From IMG/VR virus record IMGVR_UViG_3300044644_001125, positions 124,001 through 188,000 of that record: 64,000 nucleotides of DNA; one strand, 5' to 3'. Of the stretch, positions 1-39,466 are shown piece after piece (the stretch's first letter is position 1; the number at the start of each line of letters is the position of its first letter). Made by a program: the position numbers and the translations under genes. The notes beneath the pieces are model-generated. The model was given only the letters and a program-made list of their open reading frames with translations. It was not told where the DNA came from and did not search any database.

Positions 1-136
1 TATTATGGTTATGATTGCGAGGCACGTTAGTGCCGAGCTAATCTCTCTTTTTCTGTTATAAGGATAAATAAGTGTAGTCCACGGATTTGGCGATCCTGAC
101 TACTTTAGAACTATTAACTTTAGAGGAGTTCCAACT

Positions 137-7381: not shown

Positions 7382-7693
7382 TGTTTGTAATTATAACTTA
7401 AAGATAATTGATGTCAAGTTCATGATTGATTGCGAGGCCTGATAGGGCCGAGCCTAATGTTAATGCGTTATTTGCTCTTCTTGATTAATGTAATTACTTG
7501 CGAGGCCTGATAGGGCCGAGCCTTGCTGTATTTTGCGAGGCCTGATAGGGCCGAGCCTTTGTTTAGGTAGATTCTATTATCTTTTAGAAAGGTTGTCAAG
7601 AGGTTTTCTTAGTGGAAGGATAAATAAGGGTGTAACTCGCGGATGGCCGTCCCAGTTACTCTAATGCTTTCAATCTTACAGGAGAACATCAGC

Positions 7694-19235: not shown

Positions 19236-20207
19236 ATGAGATTGTACGAATTAAAAGAATCCCAATACACCCGAGATGAGTTACTAGAACTTGACTGGGA
19301 TGAGCTATGCGAAATGGCCTATGGAGTCAAGACAGGTGATATTATCCAACTTGATCCACGAAAAATCAAAATCAAATATACTGATATGGAAAATCCACAG
19401 GACTTATTCAACAAGTATGGAATGGCTTGGGTTCGTACTGTTAAATTTGATGAGCCAGTTCAGGTATCTCTAGGATTGGATGGGAATCATACTAAAGAAG
19501 ATTGGTATTTAGAAGATGGGCATCACCGAGTATTCGCTGCTCGTAAACTAAAAATGCCAACTATCACCGCTGAAGTGGAACGCATTAACTTAAAAGCGGT
19601 TGAGAAGTTACTTGGATTTCCCAATGCGAAAAAACGTCGTATCAAAGAAGATGAAGATTATCGCGGTGAGCATACCGCACCTTATAATAATGGATATGAT
19701 AGACCGTTACATGATTTGACTGGTATCTATCCAGATGATATCTACACGAGTAATGCTGCTAGATTATATAGTTCAGGTGAATCTTACGACAATGCAAGTA
19801 TTAGTATCATGCAAGGTGCGCGTGGTAGACCTAATCAAGCAATTAAAATCTACCGCGCCGTACCTCACGAGTTAACCAACGATGAATTAATCAAAAAGTA
19901 TGAAAAAGAAAAAGCTCTGATGCTTAAAACTGGTAGACTTCCAACTGGTATCACTGGTTATACGAAAAGTCAGTACTACGAGTTTGTATCCAATGAGCTA
20001 GATCGATTAGCTAATGCACCTGCCACTGCTGCTACCAAAATAGGAATCAATCCAGGTGATTGGGTTTCTATTTCTAAGCAGTATGCTATTGATCACGGTA
20101 GAGCAAATCTTGGTAACAAGTTTAAAGTTATCACCAAGACTGTTAAAGCAAAAGACTTGTACACCGATGGTAACTCGATCCATGAATGGGGCTATTCCCC
20201 AATGTAA
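19236..20207 (+). CDS. late protein: ParB/Srx-like domain plus C-terminal domain, capsid-targeting-like N-terminus
   Basis: EDGHHRVFAA ParB-like motif; IYRAVP..INPGDWV; MRLYELKE start; TAAATA 19207-19212. Confidence 0.6.
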   Translation: MRLYELKESQYTRDELLELDWDELCEMAYGVKTGDIIQLDPRKIKIKYTDMENPQDLFNKYGMAWVRTVKFDEPVQVSLGLDGNHTKEDWYLEDGHHRVFAARKLKMPTITAEVERINLKAVEKLLGFPNAKKRRIKEDEDYRGEHTAPYNNGYDRPLHDLTGIYPDDIYTSNAARLYSSGESYDNASISIMQGARGRPNQAIKIYRAVPHELTNDELIKKYEKEKALMLKTGRLPTGITGYTKSQYYEFVSNELDRLANAPATAATKIGINPGDWVSISKQYAIDHGRANLGNKFKVITKTVKAKDLYTDGNSIHEWGYSPM

Positions 20208-20394: not shown

Positions 20395-20787
20395 TTAAGA
20401 TTTCTTTGAGTAAACTGAGTTTAATATTTTGCATAATAGTTTCCTTGTTGTTGAGTATTTACCGATATCACGAACTGGTCTGACCGGATAGACCCGATCA
20501 GGTTTCCATCCTAGTTCAGCATTAGAGTAATGCATTATTATCACATTCCCGTAAAACAAACCAGCTGCGCCAATTTCTTCGAAGGTAGGCAATCTCCAAC
20601 CTGTTTTACCATCGATGTTCAACGAAAAACAATACATGATTGCTTCATCATGAGTAACTTGGATTTGATATTCGAGTGGTGCTACTTCAAAATCCAGTAA
20701 CAGGAAATCAAGATGATAGCCTGTAAACCACCATCGGTTATCAAAATCTTGTAATCGTTTTAAATACTTGTTCATGGTTAGTTCCAT
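20395..20787 (-). CDS. mini DUF1566/Lcl-like family protein with N-terminal extension
   Basis: FEVAP.EY..MYCFSLNIDGKTGWRLPT..RPVRD. Confidence 0.7.
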   Translation of the reverse strand: MELTMNKYLKRLQDFDNRWWFTGYHLDFLLLDFEVAPLEYQIQVTHDEAIMYCFSLNIDGKTGWRLPTFEEIGAAGLFYGNVIIMHYSNAELGWKPDRVYPVRPVRDIGKYSTTRKLLCKILNSVYSKKS

Positions 20788-22631: not shown

Positions 22632-22868
22632 CTAGGTACCCATTTCTCTTACTGGCCAACACAGCCTATTAAACGCATCGTGATCAGATTCGCAGTAAGC
22701 TAAACACCACATACTATCATTAGTTTGCTTATACAACTCACCTAACTCAACAATCGTTGGTAACCGCCAACCAGTCTTACCATCAATATTCAAAGAAAAA
22801 CAATAGAGTTTAGCATCACTGTACGACATTACCTGTTGATATTCAGTTGGCGTGGGTTCTAGTTTCAT
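22632..22868 (-). CDS. mini DUF1566/Lcl-like family protein
   Basis: DAKLYCFSLNIDGKTGWRLPT..WPVR. Confidence 0.75.
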   Translation of the reverse strand: MKLEPTPTEYQQVMSYSDAKLYCFSLNIDGKTGWRLPTIVELGELYKQTNDSMWCLAYCESDHDAFNRLCWPVREMGT

Positions 22869-23459
22869 TTGATATGAGCAACGTCATCGATGATAGTCAT
22901 AGTGCCCTTACAACAAATATTCCATTTTGTTTCTCCATACTCAACTGTAGTTGAATCAGTAACTGGTACTGTAATATTTAACGATTTAACCAAATTCTCA
23001 ACGCCATCTTCAAACACACGCCATACTAGTGGTGTTTCGTTATTGTGCTTGGTATTAAATCTAATGTGATATTCTTTCATTTTTGTTTCCTTTAAATAGG
23101 TATTTAATGCTCGCACCTAGCGGTGCTCGCAATATCTAAGTTAAGATACAAGTCGCGAGCACCGCTAGGTGCGAGCCAATGCAGTTATTTTTTCAACAAA
23201 TCAAACAACCCGTACTTAGACTTGGGTATCCACTTAGTTGCATTCGGTCCGCATATCTTTTCACTATACCTAGCAGTAGAGCAGTAACCTATGCTAGCTG
23301 GTGTGGTTTGTCCTAACACTGGATCGTATTCTGCATCAATAACATACAGTAAGCATTTGTAATTGTAACTTTTTGGATTACCAAACGTCATTACCTTATC
23401 AATCAAACTGATACTAGAGTAAACACAATCTTTACACAACAATTCTGATTGTTCAGTCA

Positions 23460-24779
23460 TTATATTTTTTCACCTCTTGAAAATCCACGGAATCTGATGA
23501 ATCGTGGAAAACGTAAACTAAAAGTGCCATCTTGATTTTGTGAAACTGCATCAGCACGAACTTCTACTACTTGACCAAGCATATTATCTTTACAAGCCCA
23601 GTTAGAAGTACGTTCTTCATCGGTAAATCCACCACCAACATTAACTGAAATCAATCTACCATCATCTTCACCTTCACAGATAATAGCACCTAAACGACCT
23701 TCGTTTTTACCAGTACCTTCTTCAAATCCAACAATGGCTAAGTCAACTGTAATAAATGGTTTGATTTTCAACCAAGAAGTTCCACGTTTACATTCATACT
23801 TTGCATCTGGGTCTTTAACCATTATACCTTCAAAACCTTCATCTAAGCATTTTTGATTAAAGTCTTTGAATTCCATTTCACCAATAAAAGTATCTAAGTC
23901 TACTTCAATCCATGGTACGATGCTTACGCAGCCTGTATCCTCAAATACACCTTTAAATGTATCTAACAAGTTTCTACGTCTGCGTTGACCCATTTCACTG
24001 ATACCAGCTTTAAACTCGACTAATGGCAGAATGTCAAATACGTGCAATACCGCATCATCTGTTTTTACATCATCTTTTCGATTAAGTTGTTTCATAAGTG
24101 CTTGAAAATTCTCACTCATGATTTCACCATCTATTACATAACTACGTCCGAAGTCATCGATTCGTTTTAATAAAGCATCTGTGATATGTGGGAAGTTAAC
24201 TAACTCTTTTCCATTACGAGTATACTGTTTTACTTCGCGTGCTTCGTAATCAATAATAGTCAAATTTCTCACACCATCCAACTTGTTATCGAGGATCTTC
24301 TTCCCAACCATCTTAGCATCGTGTTTCAACCCATCAGTTGCCAGTTGAACATCAAATACTGGAACTTTGTACTGTGGTTTTTTCGCTTTCTTAGCAACTG
24401 TATTAACCGTTTTCTCGGTAACACCACATCGCAAATCTTTAATCAAGATTCTACGATACCAGTTATTCCACTGGTCTTGTGTGGCAACGTCCATCGCTAA
24501 CTTAATAGCATCCCTTGCTTCGTTTCCTGTAATAGCACGGAATCTTAAGGCATCAGCCATTTCAACAAACGCAGTCCAAGGCAATCCTTGACCAGCATCT
24601 TCTTCTTTTACGGGTACTTGCTTAACACCAAATACAATTAAGTTATCCAATGCTAACTTAACACCTTCGAAAAACTCGTCTAGTTCTTCTTTCATTGCAT
24701 CGGCTAGTACTGCTTCTTTAGCCAATCTGCTGTTGTCACTTTCTAATTGTTTGATAATGTCTTGTGGTTGTGTTCTCAT
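23460..24779 (-). CDS. ATP-dependent DNA ligase
   Basis: KLDGVR adenylation motif, IDGEI, EGIMVK, WLKIK, SLRFPRF. Confidence 0.95.
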   Translation of the reverse strand: MRTQPQDIIKQLESDNSRLAKEAVLADAMKEELDEFFEGVKLALDNLIVFGVKQVPVKEEDAGQGLPWTAFVEMADALRFRAITGNEARDAIKLAMDVATQDQWNNWYRRILIKDLRCGVTEKTVNTVAKKAKKPQYKVPVFDVQLATDGLKHDAKMVGKKILDNKLDGVRNLTIIDYEAREVKQYTRNGKELVNFPHITDALLKRIDDFGRSYVIDGEIMSENFQALMKQLNRKDDVKTDDAVLHVFDILPLVEFKAGISEMGQRRRRNLLDTFKGVFEDTGCVSIVPWIEVDLDTFIGEMEFKDFNQKCLDEGFEGIMVKDPDAKYECKRGTSWLKIKPFITVDLAIVGFEEGTGKNEGRLGAIICEGEDDGRLISVNVGGGFTDEERTSNWACKDNMLGQVVEVRADAVSQNQDGTFSLRFPRFIRFRGFSRGEKI

Positions 24780-24889
24780 TGCTGTTTTCCGTTGTGGTTA
24801 ATGTTGGGTGAATTATATTGTAGTTAGTCTAGGTTGTCAAGTAGTTTTTGTTATTGGCTCGCACCTATCGGTGCTCGCAATCGTGTGGA

Positions 24890-25186
24890 TCAATTATCTT
24901 TTAGATCTCGTATGGCTCTGACGTGGTTGACGCTGTTCTTACCGTCGATGCCCCGGCCGTAATCCTGACCCATATGACCCCAGACGTAACTGCCATCGTA
25001 CTCGGTAGAGGTCCAGTACCAACGTTTTTCAAAATCATTTTCTGAATAATATATTTCATTCAATTCTTCCTTATTAGGCAACCGCCATCCAGTCTTACCA
25101 TCGATATTAAGAGAGAAGCAATATAATCTGGCATCATTCCAATTGAGTTTCGTTTCAGTAGATTTCGGTGCTATTTCAAAGTTCAT
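24890..25186 (-). CDS. DUF1566/Lcl-like protein with DGR-like variable region
   Basis: WNDARLYC..GWRLP..EL..YWTSTE..W..K..VRAIR; GC-rich, NNC-codon-rich 3' end. Confidence 0.8.
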   Translation of the reverse strand: MNFEIAPKSTETKLNWNDARLYCFSLNIDGKTGWRLPNKEELNEIYYSENDFEKRWYWTSTEYDGSYVWGHMGQDYGRGIDGKNSVNHVRAIRDLKDN

Positions 25187-27179: not shown

Positions 27180-27428
27180 TCAATTATCTTTTAGATCTCG
27201 AATAGGTCTAACAAAAAGTCTGCCATAACTCGCCTCATCATCGTCTGCTGTCCAATGATACCAAGTGGTTGCATACTCATTTTCTGATTCGTAAATCTCG
27301 TTTAGTTCTTCTCCTGTAGGTAATCTCCATCCAACTTTACCATCTATATTAAGAGAAAAGCAATACATCCTAGCTTCACCCAAAGTGGCTTCTATCTCTG
27401 TTGATTTTGGTGCTATTTCAAAGTACAT
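27180..27428 (-). CDS. mini DUF1566/Lcl-like family protein
   Basis: FEIAPKSTE..MYCFSLNIDGKVGWRLPT..RPIRDLKDN. Confidence 0.75.
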   Translation of the reverse strand: MYFEIAPKSTEIEATLGEARMYCFSLNIDGKVGWRLPTGEELNEIYESENEYATTWYHWTADDDEASYGRLFVRPIRDLKDN

Positions 27429-27730
27429 ACATCCCTCACAGGATAAGCCCAAACCGAATCACCATCGGTTTTGTAATACGTCAACGTCTCAAAATCAGTT
27501 AAATCAACTTGAGTCGCCTGATCATCGTCGGTACATTCAATAGTCCACACCCAAACTGATGGGTCATTAAAGTCTAAGTAAAACGTATCACGAATGCCTA
27601 TCAGTTCGTCAATTGTTGGTAATCTCCATCCAACCTTACCATCTATATTAAGACTAAAACAATACATCTTTGCTTCATCCCACGTCAACTCGTATTTTCG
27701 ATATTCTTCTGGTGCTATTTCAATACTCAT
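27413..27730 (-). CDS. mini DUF1566/Lcl-like family protein
   Basis: IEIAPEEY..WDEAKMYC..GWRLPTIDEL..YPVRD. Confidence 0.75.
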   Translation of the reverse strand: MSIEIAPEEYRKYELTWDEAKMYCFSLNIDGKVGWRLPTIDELIGIRDTFYLDFNDPSVWVWTIECTDDDQATQVDLTDFETLTYYKTDGDSVWAYPVRDVCTLK

Positions 27731-28023
27731 TGTAAACCCCTCACTGCAATTACTCGACCGTATACAGATTCTTTGTTACGAATGTCGTCTCTACCGAACA
27801 TCATATGTTTAATCCAAACCGCAGTAGTATTGTACTCGTATACAGCGGAAGACCAATACCAATGATCTTTATATGTATACCCACCTAAATGATATATCTC
27901 GGTTAACTCGGATAAGGTTGGTAATCTCCATCCAGTTTTACCGTTGATCTTAAGTGAAAAGCAATACAAACGAGCATCATCCCAGCTAGCTATTAGTTGC
28001 GTTGGTTCTATTTCAAATTTCAT
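27727..28023 (-). CDS. DUF1566/Lcl-like family protein
   Basis: WDDARLYC..GWRLPT..EL..YWSS..VIAVR. Confidence 0.8.
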   Translation of the reverse strand: MKFEIEPTQLIASWDDARLYCFSLKINGKTGWRLPTLSELTEIYHLGGYTYKDHWYWSSAVYEYNTTAVWIKHMMFGRDDIRNKESVYGRVIAVRGLQ

Positions 28024-29015: not shown

Positions 29016-29170
29016 AAGATAATTAACCTAGGTTGCTTGGTATTATCGCGAGAGCCGGTATTGTTTATATCTGTATCGCGAGCCACGCTAGTGGCGAGCC
29101 ATTAACCACTTGACATTTCAGAAAATCCGTTTATACTACCAGAATCTTAACAAACCTGAGAATACACAAA

Positions 29171-30094
29171 ATGAATATTATCAACGAAATGCTATTTGGC
29201 TCACATCTATACGGATTGGATACTCCAAATTCCGACAAAGACTATAAGGGTATTGTTTTACCAAGTAAAAATCAATTACTACTTGGTAAGACAAGTTTCC
29301 ATGTAGATCACTCCACAAACAACAACGCAAGTAGAAATACAAAAGACGACGTAGATAAAACCTACTACTCACTTCAGTATTTCGTAGACCTAGCTTGCCA
29401 AGGTGAAACCGTTGCACTAGATATGCTACACGCAACAGATGACAAAGTTATCGTTAACTCTGATATTTGGAAATTTCTTGTTGATAACAGACATCGTTTC
29501 TACACCAAAAGCATGAAAGCATATATCGGATATGTTAGAAAACAAGCAGCCAAGTACGGTGCAAAAGGTAGCAGACTAGCAGAAATCGAACGAGTCCTAA
29601 ACATCGCTAATGCGGCAAACGACAACCAAACTGTTGGTGAATTAACCGTCACAGAAAGCGATGTGGTCAAATGGGTAGTGTACAAAGACAACTATTACTT
29701 AGAAGTCTGTGGTAGTAAGTATCAAGACAATCTAAAAATCCCATTCCTAAAACGAGACTTACAAAAACATTTTGATAAGTATGGTGAACGTACCAAGTTA
29801 GCCAAACTCAATGAAGGTATCGATTGGAAAGCCCTCTCGCACGCATTACGCGCGGGTTACCAAGCACGTGATATTTTCACAAAAGGTTACTTTGAATATC
29901 CATTGGCAGAATCCTCAATCCTAATGGACGTAAAACAAGGTAAATTGGACTTTAATGTGGTTGAACCTCTACTGTCAAATCTAGTAGACGAAGTAACCAT
30001 TCTGGCAAACCAATCCAACTACCCAGACAAAGTCGATAGAGAATTCTGGGATGATTTCATCATCGAAAGCCATTTGCAAATTTTCGATAAGTAA
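29171..30094 (+). CDS. Pol-beta nucleotidyltransferase (RlaP / Nuc-transf-like)
   Basis: FGSHLYG..SDKDYKG (GS..DxD), DWKALSHA.R. Confidence 0.85.
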   Translation: MNIINEMLFGSHLYGLDTPNSDKDYKGIVLPSKNQLLLGKTSFHVDHSTNNNASRNTKDDVDKTYYSLQYFVDLACQGETVALDMLHATDDKVIVNSDIWKFLVDNRHRFYTKSMKAYIGYVRKQAAKYGAKGSRLAEIERVLNIANAANDNQTVGELTVTESDVVKWVVYKDNYYLEVCGSKYQDNLKIPFLKRDLQKHFDKYGERTKLAKLNEGIDWKALSHALRAGYQARDIFTKGYFEYPLAESSILMDVKQGKLDFNVVEPLLSNLVDEVTILANQSNYPDKVDREFWDDFIIESHLQIFDK

Positions 30095-30119
30095 TCGAAT
30101 TGAACCTAATAGGAAATCT

Positions 30120-30395
30120 ATGAACTTTGAAATAGCACCAGTTTTCATCAAAGCAACTTGGGACGAAGCCCGAATGTATTGTTTTGCTCTTAATGTCAAT
30201 GGTAAGACCGGTTGGAGATTACCTACGATAGCTGAACTACATGAGATGCTAAGTCGAGGATTAATCGAACCCGGAAATTACTGGTCGTCTGAAGTTACTA
30301 CCAACAACCACATCAAGTATTTGTCACCAGTCAGTGTTAGGTTCGGCGTAAATGAATACCAATTAGGCGTTTATCCAGTTCGTGATTTAGATTAA
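30120..30395 (+). CDS. mini DUF1566/Lcl-like family protein
   Basis: FEIAP..WDEARMYC..GWRLPT..YWSS..YPVRD. Confidence 0.75.
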   Translation: MNFEIAPVFIKATWDEARMYCFALNVNGKTGWRLPTIAELHEMLSRGLIEPGNYWSSEVTTNNHIKYLSPVSVRFGVNEYQLGVYPVRDLD

Positions 30396-30703
30396 ATATT
30401 GACTTACTTTCTTAATCTGTTACAATAGCATTTTGATAGCGTGCGAGGCGAGATAGCCGCCGAGCATCTTGACAATATTAATATCGCGAGCACCGCTAGG
30501 TGCGAGTATCTTGACAATATTAATATCGCGAGCACCGCTAGGTGCGAGCCAATATATGTTTGTTTGCGGAGTATCTTGACAATATTAATGTTGCGAGCAC
30601 CGCTAGGTGCGAGCCAATGTAAAACTAATATGAATTAACGATTGACTTACTTTCTTATCAGGGTTATACTAACCTTTCTTACAATTTAAAACTTAGGAGT
30701 TAC

Positions 30704-32819: not shown

Positions 32820-33288
32820 ATTGATGTCTCCTCTATAGACGTTGATTAGTAGTTCAAGATATTTCCCGATATCTTTTACTATGAGTATTTATCTTTTTGA
32901 ATCTAAAAGATAATGAAACCCAAGGAACCCGACTTAGATCGGGTTTCTTTTTGTCTAAAAGATAATGCCTTAAGGCTCGCACCTAGCGGTGCTCGCACCT
33001 CACAAATCCACCCACAATAGCTCCTCACAATATCCACCGTATACTTACATTGGCTCGCACCTAGCGGTGCTCGCGACCTCACAAATCCACCCACAATAGC
33101 TCGTCGCTAACGCTCCTCGCATCACTAAAATAAAATCCAACCTATCGGCACTCGCATCACTAAAATACAAACCAGCAACCTCACAAATCTAACCCACATC
33201 AAACCAACACCAAAAATACAAACAAATCCACTTGACATTCAACAAATCTCTAAGTACAATACGTAAAAAATACATTATAGGAACAAGC

Positions 33289-33561
33289 ATGGCAATTGAA
33301 ATAGCACCTGAAGAATACTGGAAAAAACTCGAATTTAATGATGCTAGGTTATATTTGTTTTCGTTGGTAATAGATAATCATGCAAATTGGCGATTTCCCA
33401 CACAAGATGAATGGCTTCACGAGATATACGACTTTACATCAGAATATAAGCAATTCTTTTCTGATTTTTGGCTACTAGAAGACTTGGCTTGCGTTACACC
33501 AGACAAATTAAATGAGTGGAAAGATCCGCTGTTTATAACCATACCAGTAAGAGACTTATAA
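33289..33561 (+). CDS. array unit 1
   Basis: MAIEIAPEEY..WRFPT..IPVRD. Confidence 0.75.
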   Translation: MAIEIAPEEYWKKLEFNDARLYLFSLVIDNHANWRFPTQDEWLHEIYDFTSEYKQFFSDFWLLEDLACVTPDKLNEWKDPLFITIPVRDL

Positions 33562-33833
33562 TGGCAAGACTAGACATAAAATTTGAACTCGCACCAGAGA
33601 AATACTGGAATTGTATGACGCATGAGGAAATCCGACTCTACTTGTTCTCATTGAATATTGATGGTACAACAGACTGGCGAGTACCCACTAACTACGAAAT
33701 TCTACAATTAAAAGGCATATGTTGGCAATCCGGTGAACTTGTTTGGTATAATGAAGCTGTTCTATATTTTAACAACCATCCAAGTAACGTCAGTGCATAC
33801 TACAAGTTAATTCCAGTGAGAGATAAAAGATGA
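33561..33833 (+). CDS. array unit 2
   Basis: FELAPEKY..DWRVPT..IPVRD; TAATG overlap. Confidence 0.75.
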   Translation: MARLDIKFELAPEKYWNCMTHEEIRLYLFSLNIDGTTDWRVPTNYEILQLKGICWQSGELVWYNEAVLYFNNHPSNVSAYYKLIPVRDKR

Positions 33834-34141
33834 TTGAAATAGCACCCAAAGAATATGAAATCCGATCAAGCTGGGACGATGCCCGTTTGTATTGTTTTGC
33901 TCTTCGCATAGATGGTAAAACTGGTTGGAGGTTGCCAACTGTTAAGGAGTTGAATAGTATCTGGGCTATGCCCGGCTGCGATTTTGCTAGATGGTATTAC
34001 TGGTCATCTGAAGAAGGTGACATTGGGTATGCTATTGATGTAGATTTTAATCGACAAGGTATAGATTATAAGTCATCGCCTGAGAATAAGGGATATGATG
34101 ATAACTTAGTTAGACCAGTAAGAGATCTAAAAGATGATTGA
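33830..34141 (+). CDS. array unit 3
   Basis: MIEIAP..GWRLPT..YWSS..RPVRDLKDD. Confidence 0.8.
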   Translation: MIEIAPKEYEIRSSWDDARLYCFALRIDGKTGWRLPTVKELNSIWAMPGCDFARWYYWSSEEGDIGYAIDVDFNRQGIDYKSSPENKGYDDNLVRPVRDLKDD

Positions 34142-34340
34142 GATAGGTGAAACAACAGATGCAAGATTGACCTACGCAGAAGCAGTGATGTATTGTTTTT
34201 GTTTAGGTGATGGTTGGAGATTGCCGACACGTCACGAATATTTCAATACAGACGAGGCAATGGCGTTTTCATGGTATAACGGTAAACAAAGCACGAGTCT
34301 GCGGCCAGTTACTCCAGTACGAGATCTAAAAGATGATTGA
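34134..34340 (+). CDS. array unit 4
   Basis: YCFCLGDGWRLPT..PVRDLKDD. Confidence 0.75.
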   Translation: MIEIGETTDARLTYAEAVMYCFCLGDGWRLPTRHEYFNTDEAMAFSWYNGKQSTSLRPVTPVRDLKDD

Positions 34341-34557
34341 AACAGAAATTGAAGTAGGTAAACCTGCAAAACCCATGACATATGATGAAGCGGTATTCTA
34401 TTGTTTTTGTTTAGGTGATGGTTGGAGATTGCCAACTGGCGAAGAATATATGCGTTTAAATCTGCAAATGTGTTGGTGGGAAGGTCAACGTTCATTAGGT
34501 GAAAGTTCATTAGGTGAATGGTTAGTTGTTCCAGTGCGAGATCTAAAAGATGATTGA
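34333..34557 (+). CDS. array unit 5
   Basis: YCFCLGDGWRLPT..PVRDLKDD. Confidence 0.75.
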   Translation: MIETEIEVGKPAKPMTYDEAVFYCFCLGDGWRLPTGEEYMRLNLQMCWWEGQRSLGESSLGEWLVVPVRDLKDD

Positions 34558-34765
34558 AACCAAATTTGAAATAGGTGTAAGATCAACAACAAAGATGACC
34601 TATGACGACGCAGTGATGTATTGTTTCTGTTTGGGTGATGGCTGGAGATTACCTACTATTGAAGAATTCGACGGCAATGTAAACTTCGTTTGGAACTTTA
34701 ATGACCAAACTAACCGTAATAACCGTTGGCATGTAATCCCAGTACGAGACTTACAAGATGATTGA
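34550..34765 (+). CDS. array unit 6
   Basis: YCFCLGDGWRLPT..PVRDLQDD. Confidence 0.75.
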   Translation: MIETKFEIGVRSTTKMTYDDAVMYCFCLGDGWRLPTIEEFDGNVNFVWNFNDQTNRNNRWHVIPVRDLQDD

Positions 34766-35015
34766 AATAGCACCTGAAGAATATTGGGTTGAATGTACGT
34801 GGCAAGAAATCAAACTGTACTTGTTTGTATTGACTATTGATGGTAAGCAGGATTGGAGATTACCAACCGAAGAGGAACAAGAGGATTGGTTTGTTAGCAT
34901 ACCGAATATCAAGGCTGAACGATGGACAATTACGGATACTTTGGATGAAGAATGGTATTCTCGAGTTGGATCCAAGTTTTTGTTAATCCCAGTACGAGAT
35001 CTAAAAGATGATTGA
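34758..35015 (+). CDS. array unit 7
   Basis: IDGKQDWRLPT..PVRDLKDD. Confidence 0.75.
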   Translation: MIEIAPEEYWVECTWQEIKLYLFVLTIDGKQDWRLPTEEEQEDWFVSIPNIKAERWTITDTLDEEWYSRVGSKFLLIPVRDLKDD

Positions 35016-35268
35016 GATAGCACCGGAAGAGTATTGGAAAAAATCGACCATCCACAATATCGATTTGTACTTGTTTGTTTTGACGATTGATGGTAAGATT
35101 GGCTGGAGATTGCCTACCAGCGACGAATGGATTTATTACGTGTATGATGCAAGTGACCCAAACCATTGGATGGGTAATTATTGGTTTTCAGATGAACTTG
35201 GTTATATTGAGGATCAGGGAGAACCTGAACTTGATATTATACCAGTAAGAGATCTAAAAGATGATTGA
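35008..35268 (+). CDS. array unit 8
   Basis: IDGKIGWRLPT..PVRDLKDD. Confidence 0.75.
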   Translation: MIEIAPEEYWKKSTIHNIDLYLFVLTIDGKIGWRLPTSDEWIYYVYDASDPNHWMGNYWFSDELGYIEDQGEPELDIIPVRDLKDD

Positions 35269-35949: not shown

Positions 35950-36181
35950 AGTAGCACAGAAAAAGCAATGGATTCCCCTTGTACGAGACGATGTTAAACT
36001 TCGTGTGTTTTTACTAGGTGATGGGTGGAGATTACCAACCTTTGACGAAACTCGACTGCTGCAATTTCCAACGATGACCACACCTTACTGGTATGCGGAT
36101 ATCATTAATAATCCAGAGTTAGATAAGGGTCGTAGCAATCGTCGATTACTTATCCCAGTACGAGATCTAAAAGATGATTGA
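35942..36181 (+). CDS. array unit 12 (close paralog of unit 11)
   Basis: MIEVAQK..LQFP..INNPELDK shared with unit 11. Confidence 0.75.
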   Translation: MIEVAQKKQWIPLVRDDVKLRVFLLGDGWRLPTFDETRLLQFPTMTTPYWYADIINNPELDKGRSNRRLLIPVRDLKDD

Positions 36182-36407
36182 AATAGCACCTGTTGAATAT
36201 CACAAAAAATTAACGTATACGGATGCCAAGTTATATTGTTTTTCTTTGAATATAGATGGTAAGGTTGGTTGGAGATTACCAACACAGAAAGAATTTTTCA
36301 ATAACCGAAACATATATGGTTGGTATGCTGATGGTGTAGGTGAACGAAGTGATCGATTAACTAATCTTGGAACTATTATCCCAGTACGAGATCTAAAAGA
36401 TGATTGA
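36174..36407 (+). CDS. array unit 13
   Basis: YCFSLNIDGKVGWRLPT..PVRDLKDD. Confidence 0.75.
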   Translation: MIEIAPVEYHKKLTYTDAKLYCFSLNIDGKVGWRLPTQKEFFNNRNIYGWYADGVGERSDRLTNLGTIIPVRDLKDD

Positions 36408-36609
36408 AATAGGTCCTAGAACAAATACTCCATTATCCAAAGAGGATGCGGAATTTTACTGTTTTTGCCTTGGTGACGGTTGGCGATTAGCAACAGCGGA
36501 TGAGTTTTACTCGATGCTTGGTAGTATTATTGGTTGTTACGATTCTTTTAGTGACCCAAATACCGTAAAATTATTCTTCACACCAGTACGAGATCTAAAA
36601 GATGATTGA
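36400..36609 (+). CDS. array unit 14
   Basis: YCFCLGDGWRLAT..PVRDLKDD. Confidence 0.75.
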   Translation: MIEIGPRTNTPLSKEDAEFYCFCLGDGWRLATADEFYSMLGSIIGCYDSFSDPNTVKLFFTPVRDLKDD

Positions 36610-36811
36610 GATAGGTGAACAATCAGAATTTAAAATGACCTACGACGAAGCAGTTATGTATTGTTTTTGTTTAGGTGATGGTTGGCGATTACCAAGTCAA
36701 GAAGAATACCACAAATACATCCCACCCTATTTTGGTGTAACTTGGTATCAAGAACATGGTTTGTGGTTTAATTTACCAGTAATCCCAGTGCGAGATATAA
36801 TCGATGATTGA
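36602..36811 (+). CDS. array unit 15
   Basis: YCFCLGDGWRLPS..PVRDIIDD. Confidence 0.75.
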   Translation: MIEIGEQSEFKMTYDEAVMYCFCLGDGWRLPSQEEYHKYIPPYFGVTWYQEHGLWFNLPVIPVRDIIDD

Positions 36812-37040
36812 GCAAGCACCCAAAGAATACGAAAAAGAGTTGACGTGGAATGCAGCAATCTTCTACTGTTTCTCACTTAATATTGAAGGTGATGTTGGTT
36901 GGAGATTACCGACTTATGAAGAAATACGTACTATCGTTGGTTACACGAATACGTGGAAATATTGGTACGGTGAAGTCAGAGATGACAGTGAGACTAAAAG
37001 ATATCGAGTAATCCCAGTGCGAGATCTAAAAGATGATTGA
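36804..37040 (+). CDS. array unit 16
   Basis: YCFSLNIEGDVGWRLPT..PVRDLKDD. Confidence 0.75.
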   Translation: MIEQAPKEYEKELTWNAAIFYCFSLNIEGDVGWRLPTYEEIRTIVGYTNTWKYWYGEVRDDSETKRYRVIPVRDLKDD

Positions 37041-37248
37041 AATCGGAAAAGCATCAGAATTTGGCATAAGTTATGACGAGGCAGTTTTGTATTGTTTTTG
37101 TTTGGGTGATGGTTGGAGGTTACCAACACAAGCGGAATACTACGCTAATCAGGAATCAGTTGGTGCATGCTGGTATCAAGGCGACCCGGCAAGCCATTTG
37201 GGTAAACTGTGGCCAGTAGTCCCAGTGCGAGATATAAAAGCGGATTGA
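37033..37248 (+). CDS. array unit 17
   Basis: YCFCLGDGWRLPT..PVRDIKAD. Confidence 0.75.
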   Translation: MIEIGKASEFGISYDEAVLYCFCLGDGWRLPTQAEYYANQESVGACWYQGDPASHLGKLWPVVPVRDIKAD

Positions 37249-39030: not shown

Positions 39031-39145
39031 TTAGTTACTCTCTTGTTAGTATCCGGTATTTATGGCTCGCACCTAGCGGTGCTCGCTACCAAACAAAATC
39101 CAATTAAACCTTGACATCCCTTATCTTTTAGCTATAATACGACCC

Positions 39146-39466
39146 ATGATTGAATTTGCCCCAGACGAATATTGTACATACTTAAATTGGTACGATGCCA
39201 AGGTCTACTGTTTTGCTTTGACGATTGATGGTAAGACTGGTTGGCGATTACCTACGTTTGAAGAATTTGCAGAATGGAATGCCAGTTCTGAGTATGCTGG
39301 CGTTCGTGAGTTTGATATCGCGTTACCTGTACATTTCTGTTGGACTTCAACAGAAAATGAAGATCAACAAGATACCGTGTGGGTTCACTGTGATCAAGGT
39401 ATTATCTACAGCACAGAGGGCAAGGAATATCGCAGATTAACAAAACCGTGTAGAACATTCTCTTGA
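39146..39466 (+). CDS. mini DUF1566/Lcl-like family protein
   Basis: WYDAKVYC..GWRLPT..CWTSTE; own sigma70 promoter at 39111. Confidence 0.75.
   Translation: MIEFAPDEYCTYLNWYDAKVYCFALTIDGKTGWRLPTFEEFAEWNASSEYAGVREFDIALPVHFCWTSTENEDQQDTVWVHCDQGIIYSTEGKEYRRLTKPCRTFS

What the first reader, a model, noticed from the sequence alone, without database searches (positions are those of the whole stretch)
24890..25030. DGR-style variable-region footprint in one family member, with a downstream GATA-loop hairpin
Seen: the 3' end of 24890-25186 (minus) reads tac gat ggc agt tac gtc tgg ... cgg ggc atc gac ggt aag aac agc gtc aac cac gtc aga gcc. This is a GC-rich run of NNC/NNT codons in a gene whose 5' half is AT-rich, and most of these codons derive from AAC/AAT/CAG by changing only adenines. 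The hairpin GCGAGCACC-GATA-GGTGCGAGC lies 11 nt after the stop. Known: DGRs mutate template adenines (AAC to NNC), often target DUF1566 C-termini, and need a downstream hairpin (GRNA loop in BPP-1). Inference: this gene is or was a DGR target whose TR and RT lie outside the window or in the host, which could link the whole family to retro-mutagenesis. Caveat: the same hairpin also occurs at sites with no such gene.
Basis: partly seen in the sequence, partly recalled or inferred. Interest (0 to 1): 0.75.

Follow-up and report, generated by a model that had tools for sequence, protein, structure and literature searches.

The report
Orphaned DGR variable region in phage
The flagged gene carries the worn scar of a diversity-generating retroelement whose template and reverse transcriptase are absent from this complete 327-kb lake phage genome but are present, and look active, in sister phages.

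Summary
Gene 24890-25186 (-) encodes a 98-aa stand-alone Lcl_C/DUF1566 C-type-lectin-fold protein. Its last third is GC-rich and built from NNC/NNT codons, and a stem-loop lies 11 nt after the stop.

It is one of 75 paralogs in a 327-kb lake-water jumbo phage. Twelve paralogs carry a DGR footprint, and this is the only one in the window. In 13 close paralogs, codon positions 1-2 are scrambled while position 3 stays C or T column by column.

A template inferred from those columns found a real cassette (bAvd, TR, RT) in lake metagenomes. Its TR equals the inferred template. One such contig is 93.5% identical to this genome up to the insertion point in the tail module.

Against these TRs, the paralogs differ at 41.6% of adenine sites and 10.1% of other sites (p 3e-42). 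The best copies have 1 non-adenine mismatch in about 62.

This genome closes on itself and has no RT, Avd or TR. The flagged copy is among the most decayed (8-14 non-adenine mismatches plus indels). Its orthologs conserve the ex-VR, so it is a frozen former target.

The hairpin belongs to a covarying repeat with 50 copies genome-wide and is not DGR-specific.

The parts
24890..25186 (-). Gene for a 98-aa stand-alone Lcl_C/DUF1566 (C-type-lectin-fold) protein; no other domain found.
   Evidence: ORF. Pfam Lcl_C scores 45 bits against a cut-off of 34.9. AlphaFold2 model has pLDDT 89.3 and pTM 0.80. Best PDB match is the Legionella Lcl C-terminal domain 8q4e_A, TM 0.81, followed by C-type lectin-like domains.
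24914..25018 (-). Stretch homologous to the DGR template repeat (codons Y57 to A91): a former variable region, now decayed.
   Evidence: Alignments to TRs of L155, L156 and L159 give adenine sites changed 20/41 and other sites 8/54, with 2 gap columns. A second alignment gives 20/43 and 14/62.
24923..25000 (-).
   Evidence: GC 0.56 against 0.35 in the 5' part, and 14 of 26 codons are NNC. The codon table of 13 paralogs shows positions 1-2 variable and position 3 conserved.
24857..24878 (-). Stem-loop GCGAG-CACC-GATA-GGTG-CGAGC, one member of a genome-wide covarying repeat.
   Evidence: 9 copies of the 22-mer in the window. 50 sites in the genome with 11 fully complementary stem variants. RNA fold -12.7 kcal/mol, z -3.7. 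No T-run terminator.
24812..24840 (-). Consensus sigma-70-type promoter (TTGACA, 17 nt, TATAAT) just after the hairpin, upstream of the DNA ligase gene 23460-24779 (-).
   Evidence: 12 of 12 hexamer matches. The ligase carries Pfam DNA_ligase_A_M and OB_2.
27727..28023 (-). Family paralog in the window without a DGR footprint. Others of this kind include 22632-22868, 27180-27452 and 27413-27730 (all -), 30051-30395 and 33830-34141 (+).
   Evidence: phmmer list. Pfam Lcl_C. No adenine bias against the TRs, p > 0.1.

Best explanation
The gene is a frozen, decaying former target of a diversity-generating retroelement (DGR).

The DGR belongs to the pan-genome of this phage lineage but is missing from this genome. 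In sister phages, a cassette of target gene, bAvd, TR and RT sits in the tail module. By the established DGR mechanism, TR RNA is reverse-transcribed with random bases opposite adenines, and the cDNA overwrites the 3' end of Lcl_C/DUF1566 genes. This step is inferred here, not shown.

That process wrote AAC/AAT-derived NNC/NNT codons into the ligand-binding end of a set of small C-type-lectin-fold proteins.

This genome keeps 12-13 such written copies as fixed, different alleles. Some match extant TRs almost perfectly at non-adenine sites. The flagged one has since drifted by ordinary substitutions and indels and is now conserved among its orthologs.

The protein most likely acts as a small binding module with a fixed specificity; its ligand is unknown. 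The downstream stem-loop is a general intergenic element of this phage lineage, sitting between the gene and the next promoter.
For: 1. In 13 paralogs, the variable columns have entropy of 1.0-2.0 bits (mostly above 1.3) at codon positions 1-2. Position 3 is a column-specific C or T. 93.6% of codons in these columns are NNY.
2. A template inferred from these columns matched more than 120 canonical DGR TRs in viral contigs. 4 of 5 records tested carry RVT_1.
3. Adding the phage-specific 3' end gave one metagenome hit, L155. It reads VR, terminator, promoter, bAvd, TR, RT with SQFFAN and YVDD motifs. Its TR equals the inferred template, including which columns are AAT and which AAC.
4. The identical Avd is on a 271,688-bp scaffold and on L159. 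L159's first 1069 nt are 93.5% identical to genome 20690-19622.
5. DGR-bearing contigs carry the same lineage-specific hairpin.
6. Three TR alleles (TTC AAC AAT, ATG AAT AAT, ATG TCA AAT) correspond to the three VR subtypes in this genome.
7. Against the best TR, adenine sites are changed at 237/570 and other sites at 80/793: odds ratio 6.3, p 3e-42. Three copies have 1 non-adenine mismatch in 61-62.
8. In 7 DGR-bearing loci, TR and VR differ at 18-22 adenines and 1-2 other sites. Every sample has a different VR.
9. This genome has no RVT_1, bAvd or RT homolog, and no TR by an adenine-only mismatch scan. Its ends overlap by 176 nt and relatives bridge the junction.
10. Three orthologous VRs in 93-96% identical strains have 0-1 mismatch, while the rest of each aligned ~500-680-nt stretch (flanks plus the 5' part of the gene) has 17-32. 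Orthologs of the flagged gene conserve the ex-VR.
Against: - It is not shown that an ancestor of this exact genome carried the cassette. The written genes could have arrived by recombination with DGR-bearing strains.
- The 3' flank of the VRs here (GCCATCAGATCAAT) differs from that of VRs next to the cassette (GCCACCCGGAGA), which is absent here. The cognate TR allele for these copies may therefore not have been seen.
- One gene (genome 325548-325844) shows VR-local differences between close strains, so some recent change cannot be excluded.
- Only assembled contigs could be laid, not raw reads. Rare variants are invisible.
- The contig is a metagenome assembly and may merge strains.
Confidence: 0.8

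Rival explanations
1. The variable regions in this genome are still being rewritten in trans. The DGR would belong to a co-infecting sister phage, or less likely to the host, and the downstream hairpin would serve as the target-recognition structure.
For: - The cassette and the window sequence are both held by seven of the same lake runs: X3, X7, X10, X15, X20, X21, X22.
- Three paralogs differ from extant TRs at only 1 non-adenine site in 61-62.
- 7 of 13 VR-type genes have the hairpin within 100 nt downstream, against 7 of 62 other family genes (p 0.0017) and 17 of 326 other ORFs.
- The flagged copy's GATA loop and spacing are close to the 7-10 bp stem, GRNA loop and 4-34 bp distance described for phage DGRs (PMC3240598).
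Against: - Three orthologous VRs are unchanged between strains that differ by 4-7% in flanks.
- The flagged gene has indels and 8-14 non-adenine mismatches, and its orthologs conserve the ex-VR.
- The 3' flank shared by TR-adjacent VRs is absent from this genome.
- 36 of 50 hairpins are not near family genes, and most loops are GCTA, not GRNA.
- The hairpin enrichment may only reflect that it marks operon ends.
Confidence: 0.13
2. The gene is an active target of a DGR encoded elsewhere in the same phage genome, in a part not assembled.
For: CheckV rates the record 92% complete, and IMG/VR calls it linear.
Against: - The last 176 nt repeat the first 176 nt at 98.9%, and two independent contigs bridge end to start.
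- No RVT_1, bAvd, RT homolog or TR is found. The same RVT_1 search finds RTs in 4 of 5 control DGR records.
- At the place where relatives carry the cassette, two convergent genes abut.
Confidence: 0.03
3. There is no DGR history. The NNC/NNT pattern would come from diversifying selection, local GC-rich composition or gene conversion among paralogs.
For: - Mosaic paralog swaps and copy-number changes do occur in the arrays.
- Third-position divergence in the variable codons (0.33) equals that of synonymous sites elsewhere in the genes (0.34).
Against: - Selection alone does not explain column-specific third bases that equal those of a real TR.
- It does not explain a 6-fold excess of mismatches at TR adenines.
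- It does not explain that a template deduced from the paralogs retrieves a bAvd-TR-RT cassette.
Confidence: 0.03

Closest known systems
DGR targets of the DUF1566/CLec2 class ('category d' of Wu et al. 2018, PMC5758913; example Legionella LdtA)
   Same: The variable region is at the C-terminal end of a DUF1566 domain. The scaffold is the same: YWSSTE .. AW.Q.F..G.Q....K .. VRA.R. According to that paper, about half of these targets are short proteins made of the domain alone. The TR consensus shared with more than 120 viral DGRs matches the template inferred here.
   Different: The written genes here sit in a genome with no RT, Avd or TR. There are at least 12 of them, inside a 75-member family of about 98-aa proteins, in a lytic-looking jumbo phage. 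They record three different TR alleles.
Bordetella phage BPP-1 DGR (mtd, avd, TR, brt) and its target-site hairpin (Guo et al. 2011, PMC3240598)
   Same: In the sister phages: target gene, Avd, TR and RT in that order, adenine-only TR/VR differences, and location in the tail module. A GC-rich 4-nt-loop hairpin lies shortly after the flagged gene, with loop GATA fitting GRNA.
   Different: The hairpin here is a 50-copy genomic repeat with an interrupted stem and mostly GCTA loops. The VR next to the cassette is followed by a different, terminator-like hairpin. BPP-1 has one target, whereas these cassettes have up to four VR-like copies within 10 kb.
Legionella pneumophila Lcl C-terminal domain (PDB 8q4e)
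   Same: Same fold: TM 0.81 over 99 columns, 26% identity. Same Pfam family.
   Different: Lcl is the C-terminal domain of a larger surface protein. This is a free-standing 98-aa protein with no other domain found and with a DGR-derived end.
Promoter-stem-loop cassettes of T4-type phage plastic regions (PeSL; recalled from memory, not checked here)
   Same: A repeated stem-loop lies next to consensus early-type promoters in regions full of small genes.
   Different: No homology was tested. The element here has conserved GCGAG/CGAGC flanks, a GNTA loop and covarying stems.

Membership tests
Diversity-generating retroelement (complete system in this genome) | A reverse transcriptase of the DGR clade encoded in the same genome | tested here: not met
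   No RVT_1 at E<=1. No credible hit (best E 0.097) with DGR RTs by hmmsearch or tblastn, nor with the L159 RT. The same search finds RTs in 4 of 5 control DGR records. The genome closes on itself.
Diversity-generating retroelement (complete system in this genome) | A template repeat in the genome that differs from the VR only at its adenines | tested here: not met
   An adenine-only mismatch scan of both strands was run for all 13 VRs. The best non-self places have 12-26 non-adenine mismatches per 90 nt; those with 12-22 are paralogs and the rest are chance matches.
Diversity-generating retroelement (complete system in this genome) | Accessory variability determinant (Avd) | tested here: not met
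   No bAvd (PF22296) match at E<=1.
DGR variable region (product of mutagenic retrohoming) | Differences from a cognate TR concentrated at TR adenines | tested here: met
   Measured against TRs of sister-phage cassettes. Flagged gene: 20/41 adenine sites against 8/54 other sites (p 4e-4). Subgroup: 237/570 against 80/793 (p 3e-42). Best copies: 1 non-adenine mismatch in 61-62.
DGR variable region (product of mutagenic retrohoming) | VR at the C-terminal end of a C-type-lectin-fold target protein | tested here: met
   Pfam Lcl_C. Confident model whose best match is 8q4e, followed by CTLDs. The ex-VR covers residues 57-91 of 98.
DGR variable region (product of mutagenic retrohoming) | Present-day variation confined to the VR in the population | tested here: not met
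   Orthologs P0002-P0005 conserve GQDYGxGIDGKN and differ by indels. The X2 contig has 35 differences in 1082 nt, and only 2 of the listed ones fall in the ex-VR. Three other VRs have 0-1 change between strains. Only contigs were available, not raw reads.
DGR target-site hairpin (Guo et al. 2011) | 7-10 bp GC-rich stem, 4-nt GRNA loop, 4-34 bp after the VR, specific to the target | tested here: inconclusive
   The loop GATA fits GRNA. The stem has 5+2 pairs with a G.A/A.G interruption. It lies 35 nt after the last TR-homologous base. The element has 50 copies, 36 of them away from family genes, and its commonest loop GCTA does not fit. Consensus taken from PMC3240598.
Pfam Lcl_C / DUF1566 (PF07603) | Score above the curated gathering threshold | tested here: met
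   45.0 bits against 34.9, residues 10-93.

The most novel reading that the evidence does not exclude
A lineage of lake jumbo phages uses one DGR in its tail module to write diversity into a dispersed multigene family of free-standing, roughly 98-aa lectin-fold proteins, rather than only into a tail-fibre tip.

Written copies are then duplicated, exchanged and kept as a fixed, germline-like library of binders. This library persists and is used even in genomes that have lost the retroelement. Successive TR alleles are recorded in the paralogs.
Probability: 0.4. Interest if true: 0.75.

Novelty: new variant of a known kind. Interest (0 to 1): 0.6.

Why it matters
DGRs are usually catalogued by finding an RT with a nearby TR/VR pair, so written targets in genomes without the retroelement are missed.

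This case shows three things:
- A VR can be recognised, and its template reconstructed base by base, from paralogs alone.
- The reconstructed template can then be used to find the living element in other genomes.
- DGR presence is a strain-level polymorphism in a jumbo phage, while its products persist as a multigene family.

If the small lectin-fold proteins are binders with different specificities, this links hypermutation to the growth of a stable gene repertoire. That idea could be tested with the sequences identified here.

Tried and rejected
- GenBank phages: no DNA match to the region and no protein match to the gene. The ligase finds only about 33% identical hits in unrelated phages.
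- An AAC-dense window at genome 312410 is out-of-frame AAC in a Gln-rich 801-aa protein, not a TR.
- None of the paralogs acts as TR for the others. The best ordered pair has 17% non-adenine mismatches.
- The viral-contig and genome-contig scans for a TR with the phage-specific 3' end found nothing.
- I first argued that conserved third positions implied rewriting after the paralogs diverged. Measurement did not support this: 0.33 against 0.34 at synonymous sites. The mean mixes TR alleles and copies of different age.
- The distant complete relative G001 (372 kb, 128-nt terminal repeat, 36 family members) has no RT. It shares only 9% of the genome at 70% identity, so it says little.
- One ORF with YYDD contaminated my RT profile and produced a false hit in G001.
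- Read laying returned only short Logan contigs, so rare variants could not be assessed.
- Literature searches for orphan or relic DGR variable regions and for DUF1566 families in jumbo phages found nothing relevant.

Full report
**1. What is at the site**

On the minus strand, 24890-25186 is a 98-aa ORF. It scores above Pfam's threshold for Lcl_C/DUF1566, with 45 bits against 34.9. Modelled with 13 paralogs as its alignment, it folds confidently (pLDDT 89.3, pTM 0.80). The best solved match is the Legionella Lcl C-terminal domain 8q4e (TM 0.81), followed by many C-type lectin-like domains.

Codons 63-88 have GC 0.56 against 0.35 in the 5' part, and 14 of 26 are NNC. The stem-loop at 24857-24878 starts 11 nt after the stop. 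A perfect TTGACA-17-TATAAT promoter for the ligase gene follows it at 24840-24812.

**2. Genomic setting**

The window is part of a 327,256-bp IMG/VR phage record with 38% GC. Its last 176 nt repeat its first 176 nt at 98.9%. Contigs from other samples (L127, L131) run across the junction, so the genome is closed.

Sequencing runs that hold it are lake and freshwater metagenomes. No cultured phage is close. phmmer finds 75 ORFs of the same small-protein family in the genome, many in tandem arrays.

**3. The footprint is a family property**

In 32 aligned paralogs the N-terminal 62 residues are conserved and the next 30 or so are hypervariable. Third-position C rises from 17% to 38% in the variable part, p 2e-16.

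In the 13 closest paralogs the pattern is sharp:
- In the variable columns, positions 1-2 have 1.0-2.0 bits of entropy (mostly above 1.3). Position 3 is a fixed C in some columns and a fixed T in others.
- The codons TGG, CAG, TTC/ATG, GGC and AAG are held constant between the variable columns.
- 93.6% of codons in the variable columns are NNY.

Replacing each variable NNC/NNT by AAC/AAT gives an explicit predicted template.

**4. The predicted template exists**

A 30-nt core of the prediction matched more than 120 viral contigs. These are canonical AAC-rich DGR TRs. 4 of 5 records tested carry an RVT_1 reverse transcriptase with SQxxxN and YxDD motifs, which also serves as a positive control for the RT search.

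Adding the phage-specific 3' end (TAYGTTAGRGC) gave nothing in viral contigs or in 185,579 species genomes. It gave one hit in JGI metagenomes, L155.

Read on its minus strand, L155 contains, in order:
- the 3' end of a DUF1566 gene
- a terminator-like hairpin
- a consensus promoter
- a 116-aa bAvd
- a TR
- the start of an RT with SQFFAN and YVDD

The TR equals the predicted template at 94 of 96 bases from AAC AAT GGC to GTT AGA GCC. That includes which columns are AAT and which are AAC. The two predicted non-adenine bases that turned out to be adenine lie in variable columns.

**5. The cassette belongs to sister phages**

The identical Avd protein is recorded in 31 blocks of the contig collection. 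One is a 271,688-bp scaffold (L156), which also encodes several mini-proteins of the family.

In L159, the first 1069 nt are 93.5% identical to genome 20690-19622. That stretch holds a tail-sheath-family gene and a 128-aa gene, each about 95% identical in protein. Then follow the target gene (176 aa, Lcl_C), bAvd, TR, RT (379 aa, RVT_1) and a sulfotransferase. Other loci continue with a 905-aa glycosyl/methyltransferase and end at a homolog of the 1482-aa fibre-like protein.

In this genome the 128-aa gene and the 1482-aa gene abut with overlapping stops at 19610-19613. The roughly 9-kb island is simply absent. The DGR-bearing contigs also carry the lineage's characteristic stem-loop.

**6. 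TR/VR arithmetic**

In seven DGR-bearing loci, the adjacent VR differs from its own TR at 18-22 adenines and at 1-2 other bases (the TR's TAG against the VR's CGG in all seven; L156 has one more). Every sample has a different VR, which is the signature of an active element.

Three TR alleles occur: TTC AAC AAT, ATG AAT AAT and ATG TCA AAT. They match the three VR subtypes found among this genome's paralogs.

Against the best allele, the 13 paralogs differ at 237 of 570 adenine sites and 80 of 793 other sites: odds ratio 6.3, p 3e-42. Genome 324532-324822 has 24/44 against 1/62, 240057-240350 has 16/45 against 1/61, and 236965-237261 has 15/44 against 1/62.

Over all 75 ORFs there is a continuum, from 1.6% to about 50% non-adenine mismatch. 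Twelve ORFs keep a significant adenine bias. The flagged gene is the only one of these in the window.

**7. The flagged copy is old and no longer written**

It has 8-14 non-adenine mismatches, depending on the alignment, plus gaps. Scaffold residues are altered: Q to H, F to G and G to Y.

Its closest database relatives (P0002-P0005, 72-84% identical, same DLKDN end) all keep GQDYGxGIDGKN. They differ from it by a 4-6-residue indel in the 5' part of the ex-VR.

A 1082-nt contig from another lake covers the gene with 35 differences. Only two of the differences listed, 24911 and 24956, fall in the ex-VR; 595 further differences were not shown. A third lake holds a recombinant with a diverged N-terminal part.

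Elsewhere in the genome, three orthologous VRs are unchanged (0-1 mismatch) between strains, while the rest of each aligned stretch carries 17-32 mismatches. Two genes were replaced as whole mosaic units. One shows VR-local changes including a 3-nt indel.

Mean third-position divergence in the variable codons equals that of synonymous sites. The copies were therefore written at different times, some long ago.

**8. No machinery here**

There is no RVT_1, no bAvd and no credible hit (best E 0.097) with DGR RTs or with the lineage's own RT. There is no TR by an adenine-only mismatch scan. The 3' flank shared by TR-adjacent VRs (GCCACCCGGAGA) does not occur in this genome, whose VRs end in GCCATCAGATCAAT.

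**9. The hairpin**

It is a family of the form GCGAG, 4 nt, GNTA, 4 complementary nt, CGAGC.
- There are 50 sites in the genome and 16 in the window.
- There are 11 different inner stems, all fully Watson-Crick. That is real covariation.
- Loops are GCTA (26), GATA (14) and GTTA (8).
- It folds as 5 pairs, a tandem G.A mismatch and 2 pairs, at about -13 kcal/mol with z about -3.5.
- It has no T-run.
- It usually precedes CAAT plus a ribosome-binding site, or a promoter.

It is enriched after VR-type genes: 7/13, against 7/62 other family genes and 17/326 other ORFs. This may only reflect operon ends.

Guo et al. 2011 describe target hairpins with 7-10 bp stems, GRNA loops and a distance of 4-34 bp from the VR. 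The flagged copy nearly fits, but most copies do not. I regard a DGR role as unproven and unlikely to be its main role.

**10. Mechanism, shown and inferred**

Shown:
- homology of the ex-VR to TRs
- adenine-biased differences
- absence of the machinery in this genome
- presence of an active-looking cassette in sister genomes
- conservation of the flagged ex-VR among its orthologs
- the lectin fold

Inferred from established DGR biology:
- The copies were written by Avd/RT-mediated mutagenic retrohoming.
- The written residues form the ligand-binding surface.

Not known:
- the ligand
- whether the proteins are virion-borne or intracellular
- whether this genome lost the island or acquired written genes by recombination

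**11. Novelty**

The mechanism and the target class are known (Wu et al. 2018, category d). What differs is the configuration:
- an array of at least 12 written VRs in a closed jumbo-phage genome that lacks the retroelement
- those VRs sitting inside a 75-member family of free-standing mini-proteins
- a record of three TR alleles
- DGR presence or absence as a strain-level polymorphism

I found no description of this in the searchable literature, which is not proof of absence.

Noticed in passing
window 17-38, 1841-1904, 7432-7556, 23109-23176, 24857-24878, 29078-29099, 30486-30614, 32975-33074, 39065-39086: A structured repeat of the form GCGAG-N4-GNTA-N4'-CGAGC. It has 50 sites in the genome and 11 different, fully complementary inner stems, with conserved flanks that form a tandem G.A mismatch. 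It also occurs in related contigs. This looks like a protein- or RNase-recognised hairpin of unknown function.
   Followed up: partly
whole genome; in the window e.g. 20395-20787, 22632-22868, 27180-28023, 30051-30395, 33232-34340, 34550-35268, 36174-37248, 39146-39466: 75 ORFs of one Lcl_C/DUF1566 mini-protein family in a 327-kb phage, many in tandem with overlapping stop and start codons. 343 database clusters at E<=1e-10, almost all unnamed metagenome proteins.
   Followed up: partly
window 30486-30614: Three tandem units, each made of TTGACAATATTAATAT(C/G)T? plus the stem-loop, 42-65 nt apart. This may be a repeated promoter-like or operator-like array.
   Followed up: no
genome ends (outside the window): first and last 176 nt: The record IMG/VR calls 'linear, 92% complete' has a 176-nt terminal overlap with 2 mismatches. 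Contigs from other samples bridge it, so it is a closed or circularly permuted genome.
   Followed up: yes
L156 1-10752, L157, L158, L159 (sister-phage contigs): The DGR island also carries a sulfotransferase, a 905-aa glycosyl/methyltransferase, a 2OG-Fe(II) oxygenase and further Lcl_C genes with VR-like ends (up to four VR-like copies within 10 kb). It lies between a tail-sheath-family gene and a fibre-like gene.
   Followed up: partly
L159 about 1340-1410: A short TR-like fragment (AAT GGC AAT CAG AAT AAC AAC AAT AAG AAC AAC ...) lies upstream of the target gene, outside the annotated TR. It may be a remnant of a second template.
   Followed up: no
L124 6389-6463 against genome 237139-238401: A closely related strain lacks about 1.2 kb (three to four paralogs) of the tandem array. 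Two other paralogs are replaced by mosaic versions. The arrays change by unequal crossing-over.
   Followed up: partly
window 24968-25027 in run X4: In one lake sample, 60 nt of the 5' part of the ex-VR are replaced by 72 other letters, joined to an N-terminal part that is 21% diverged. This is a recombinant with another paralog.
   Followed up: no
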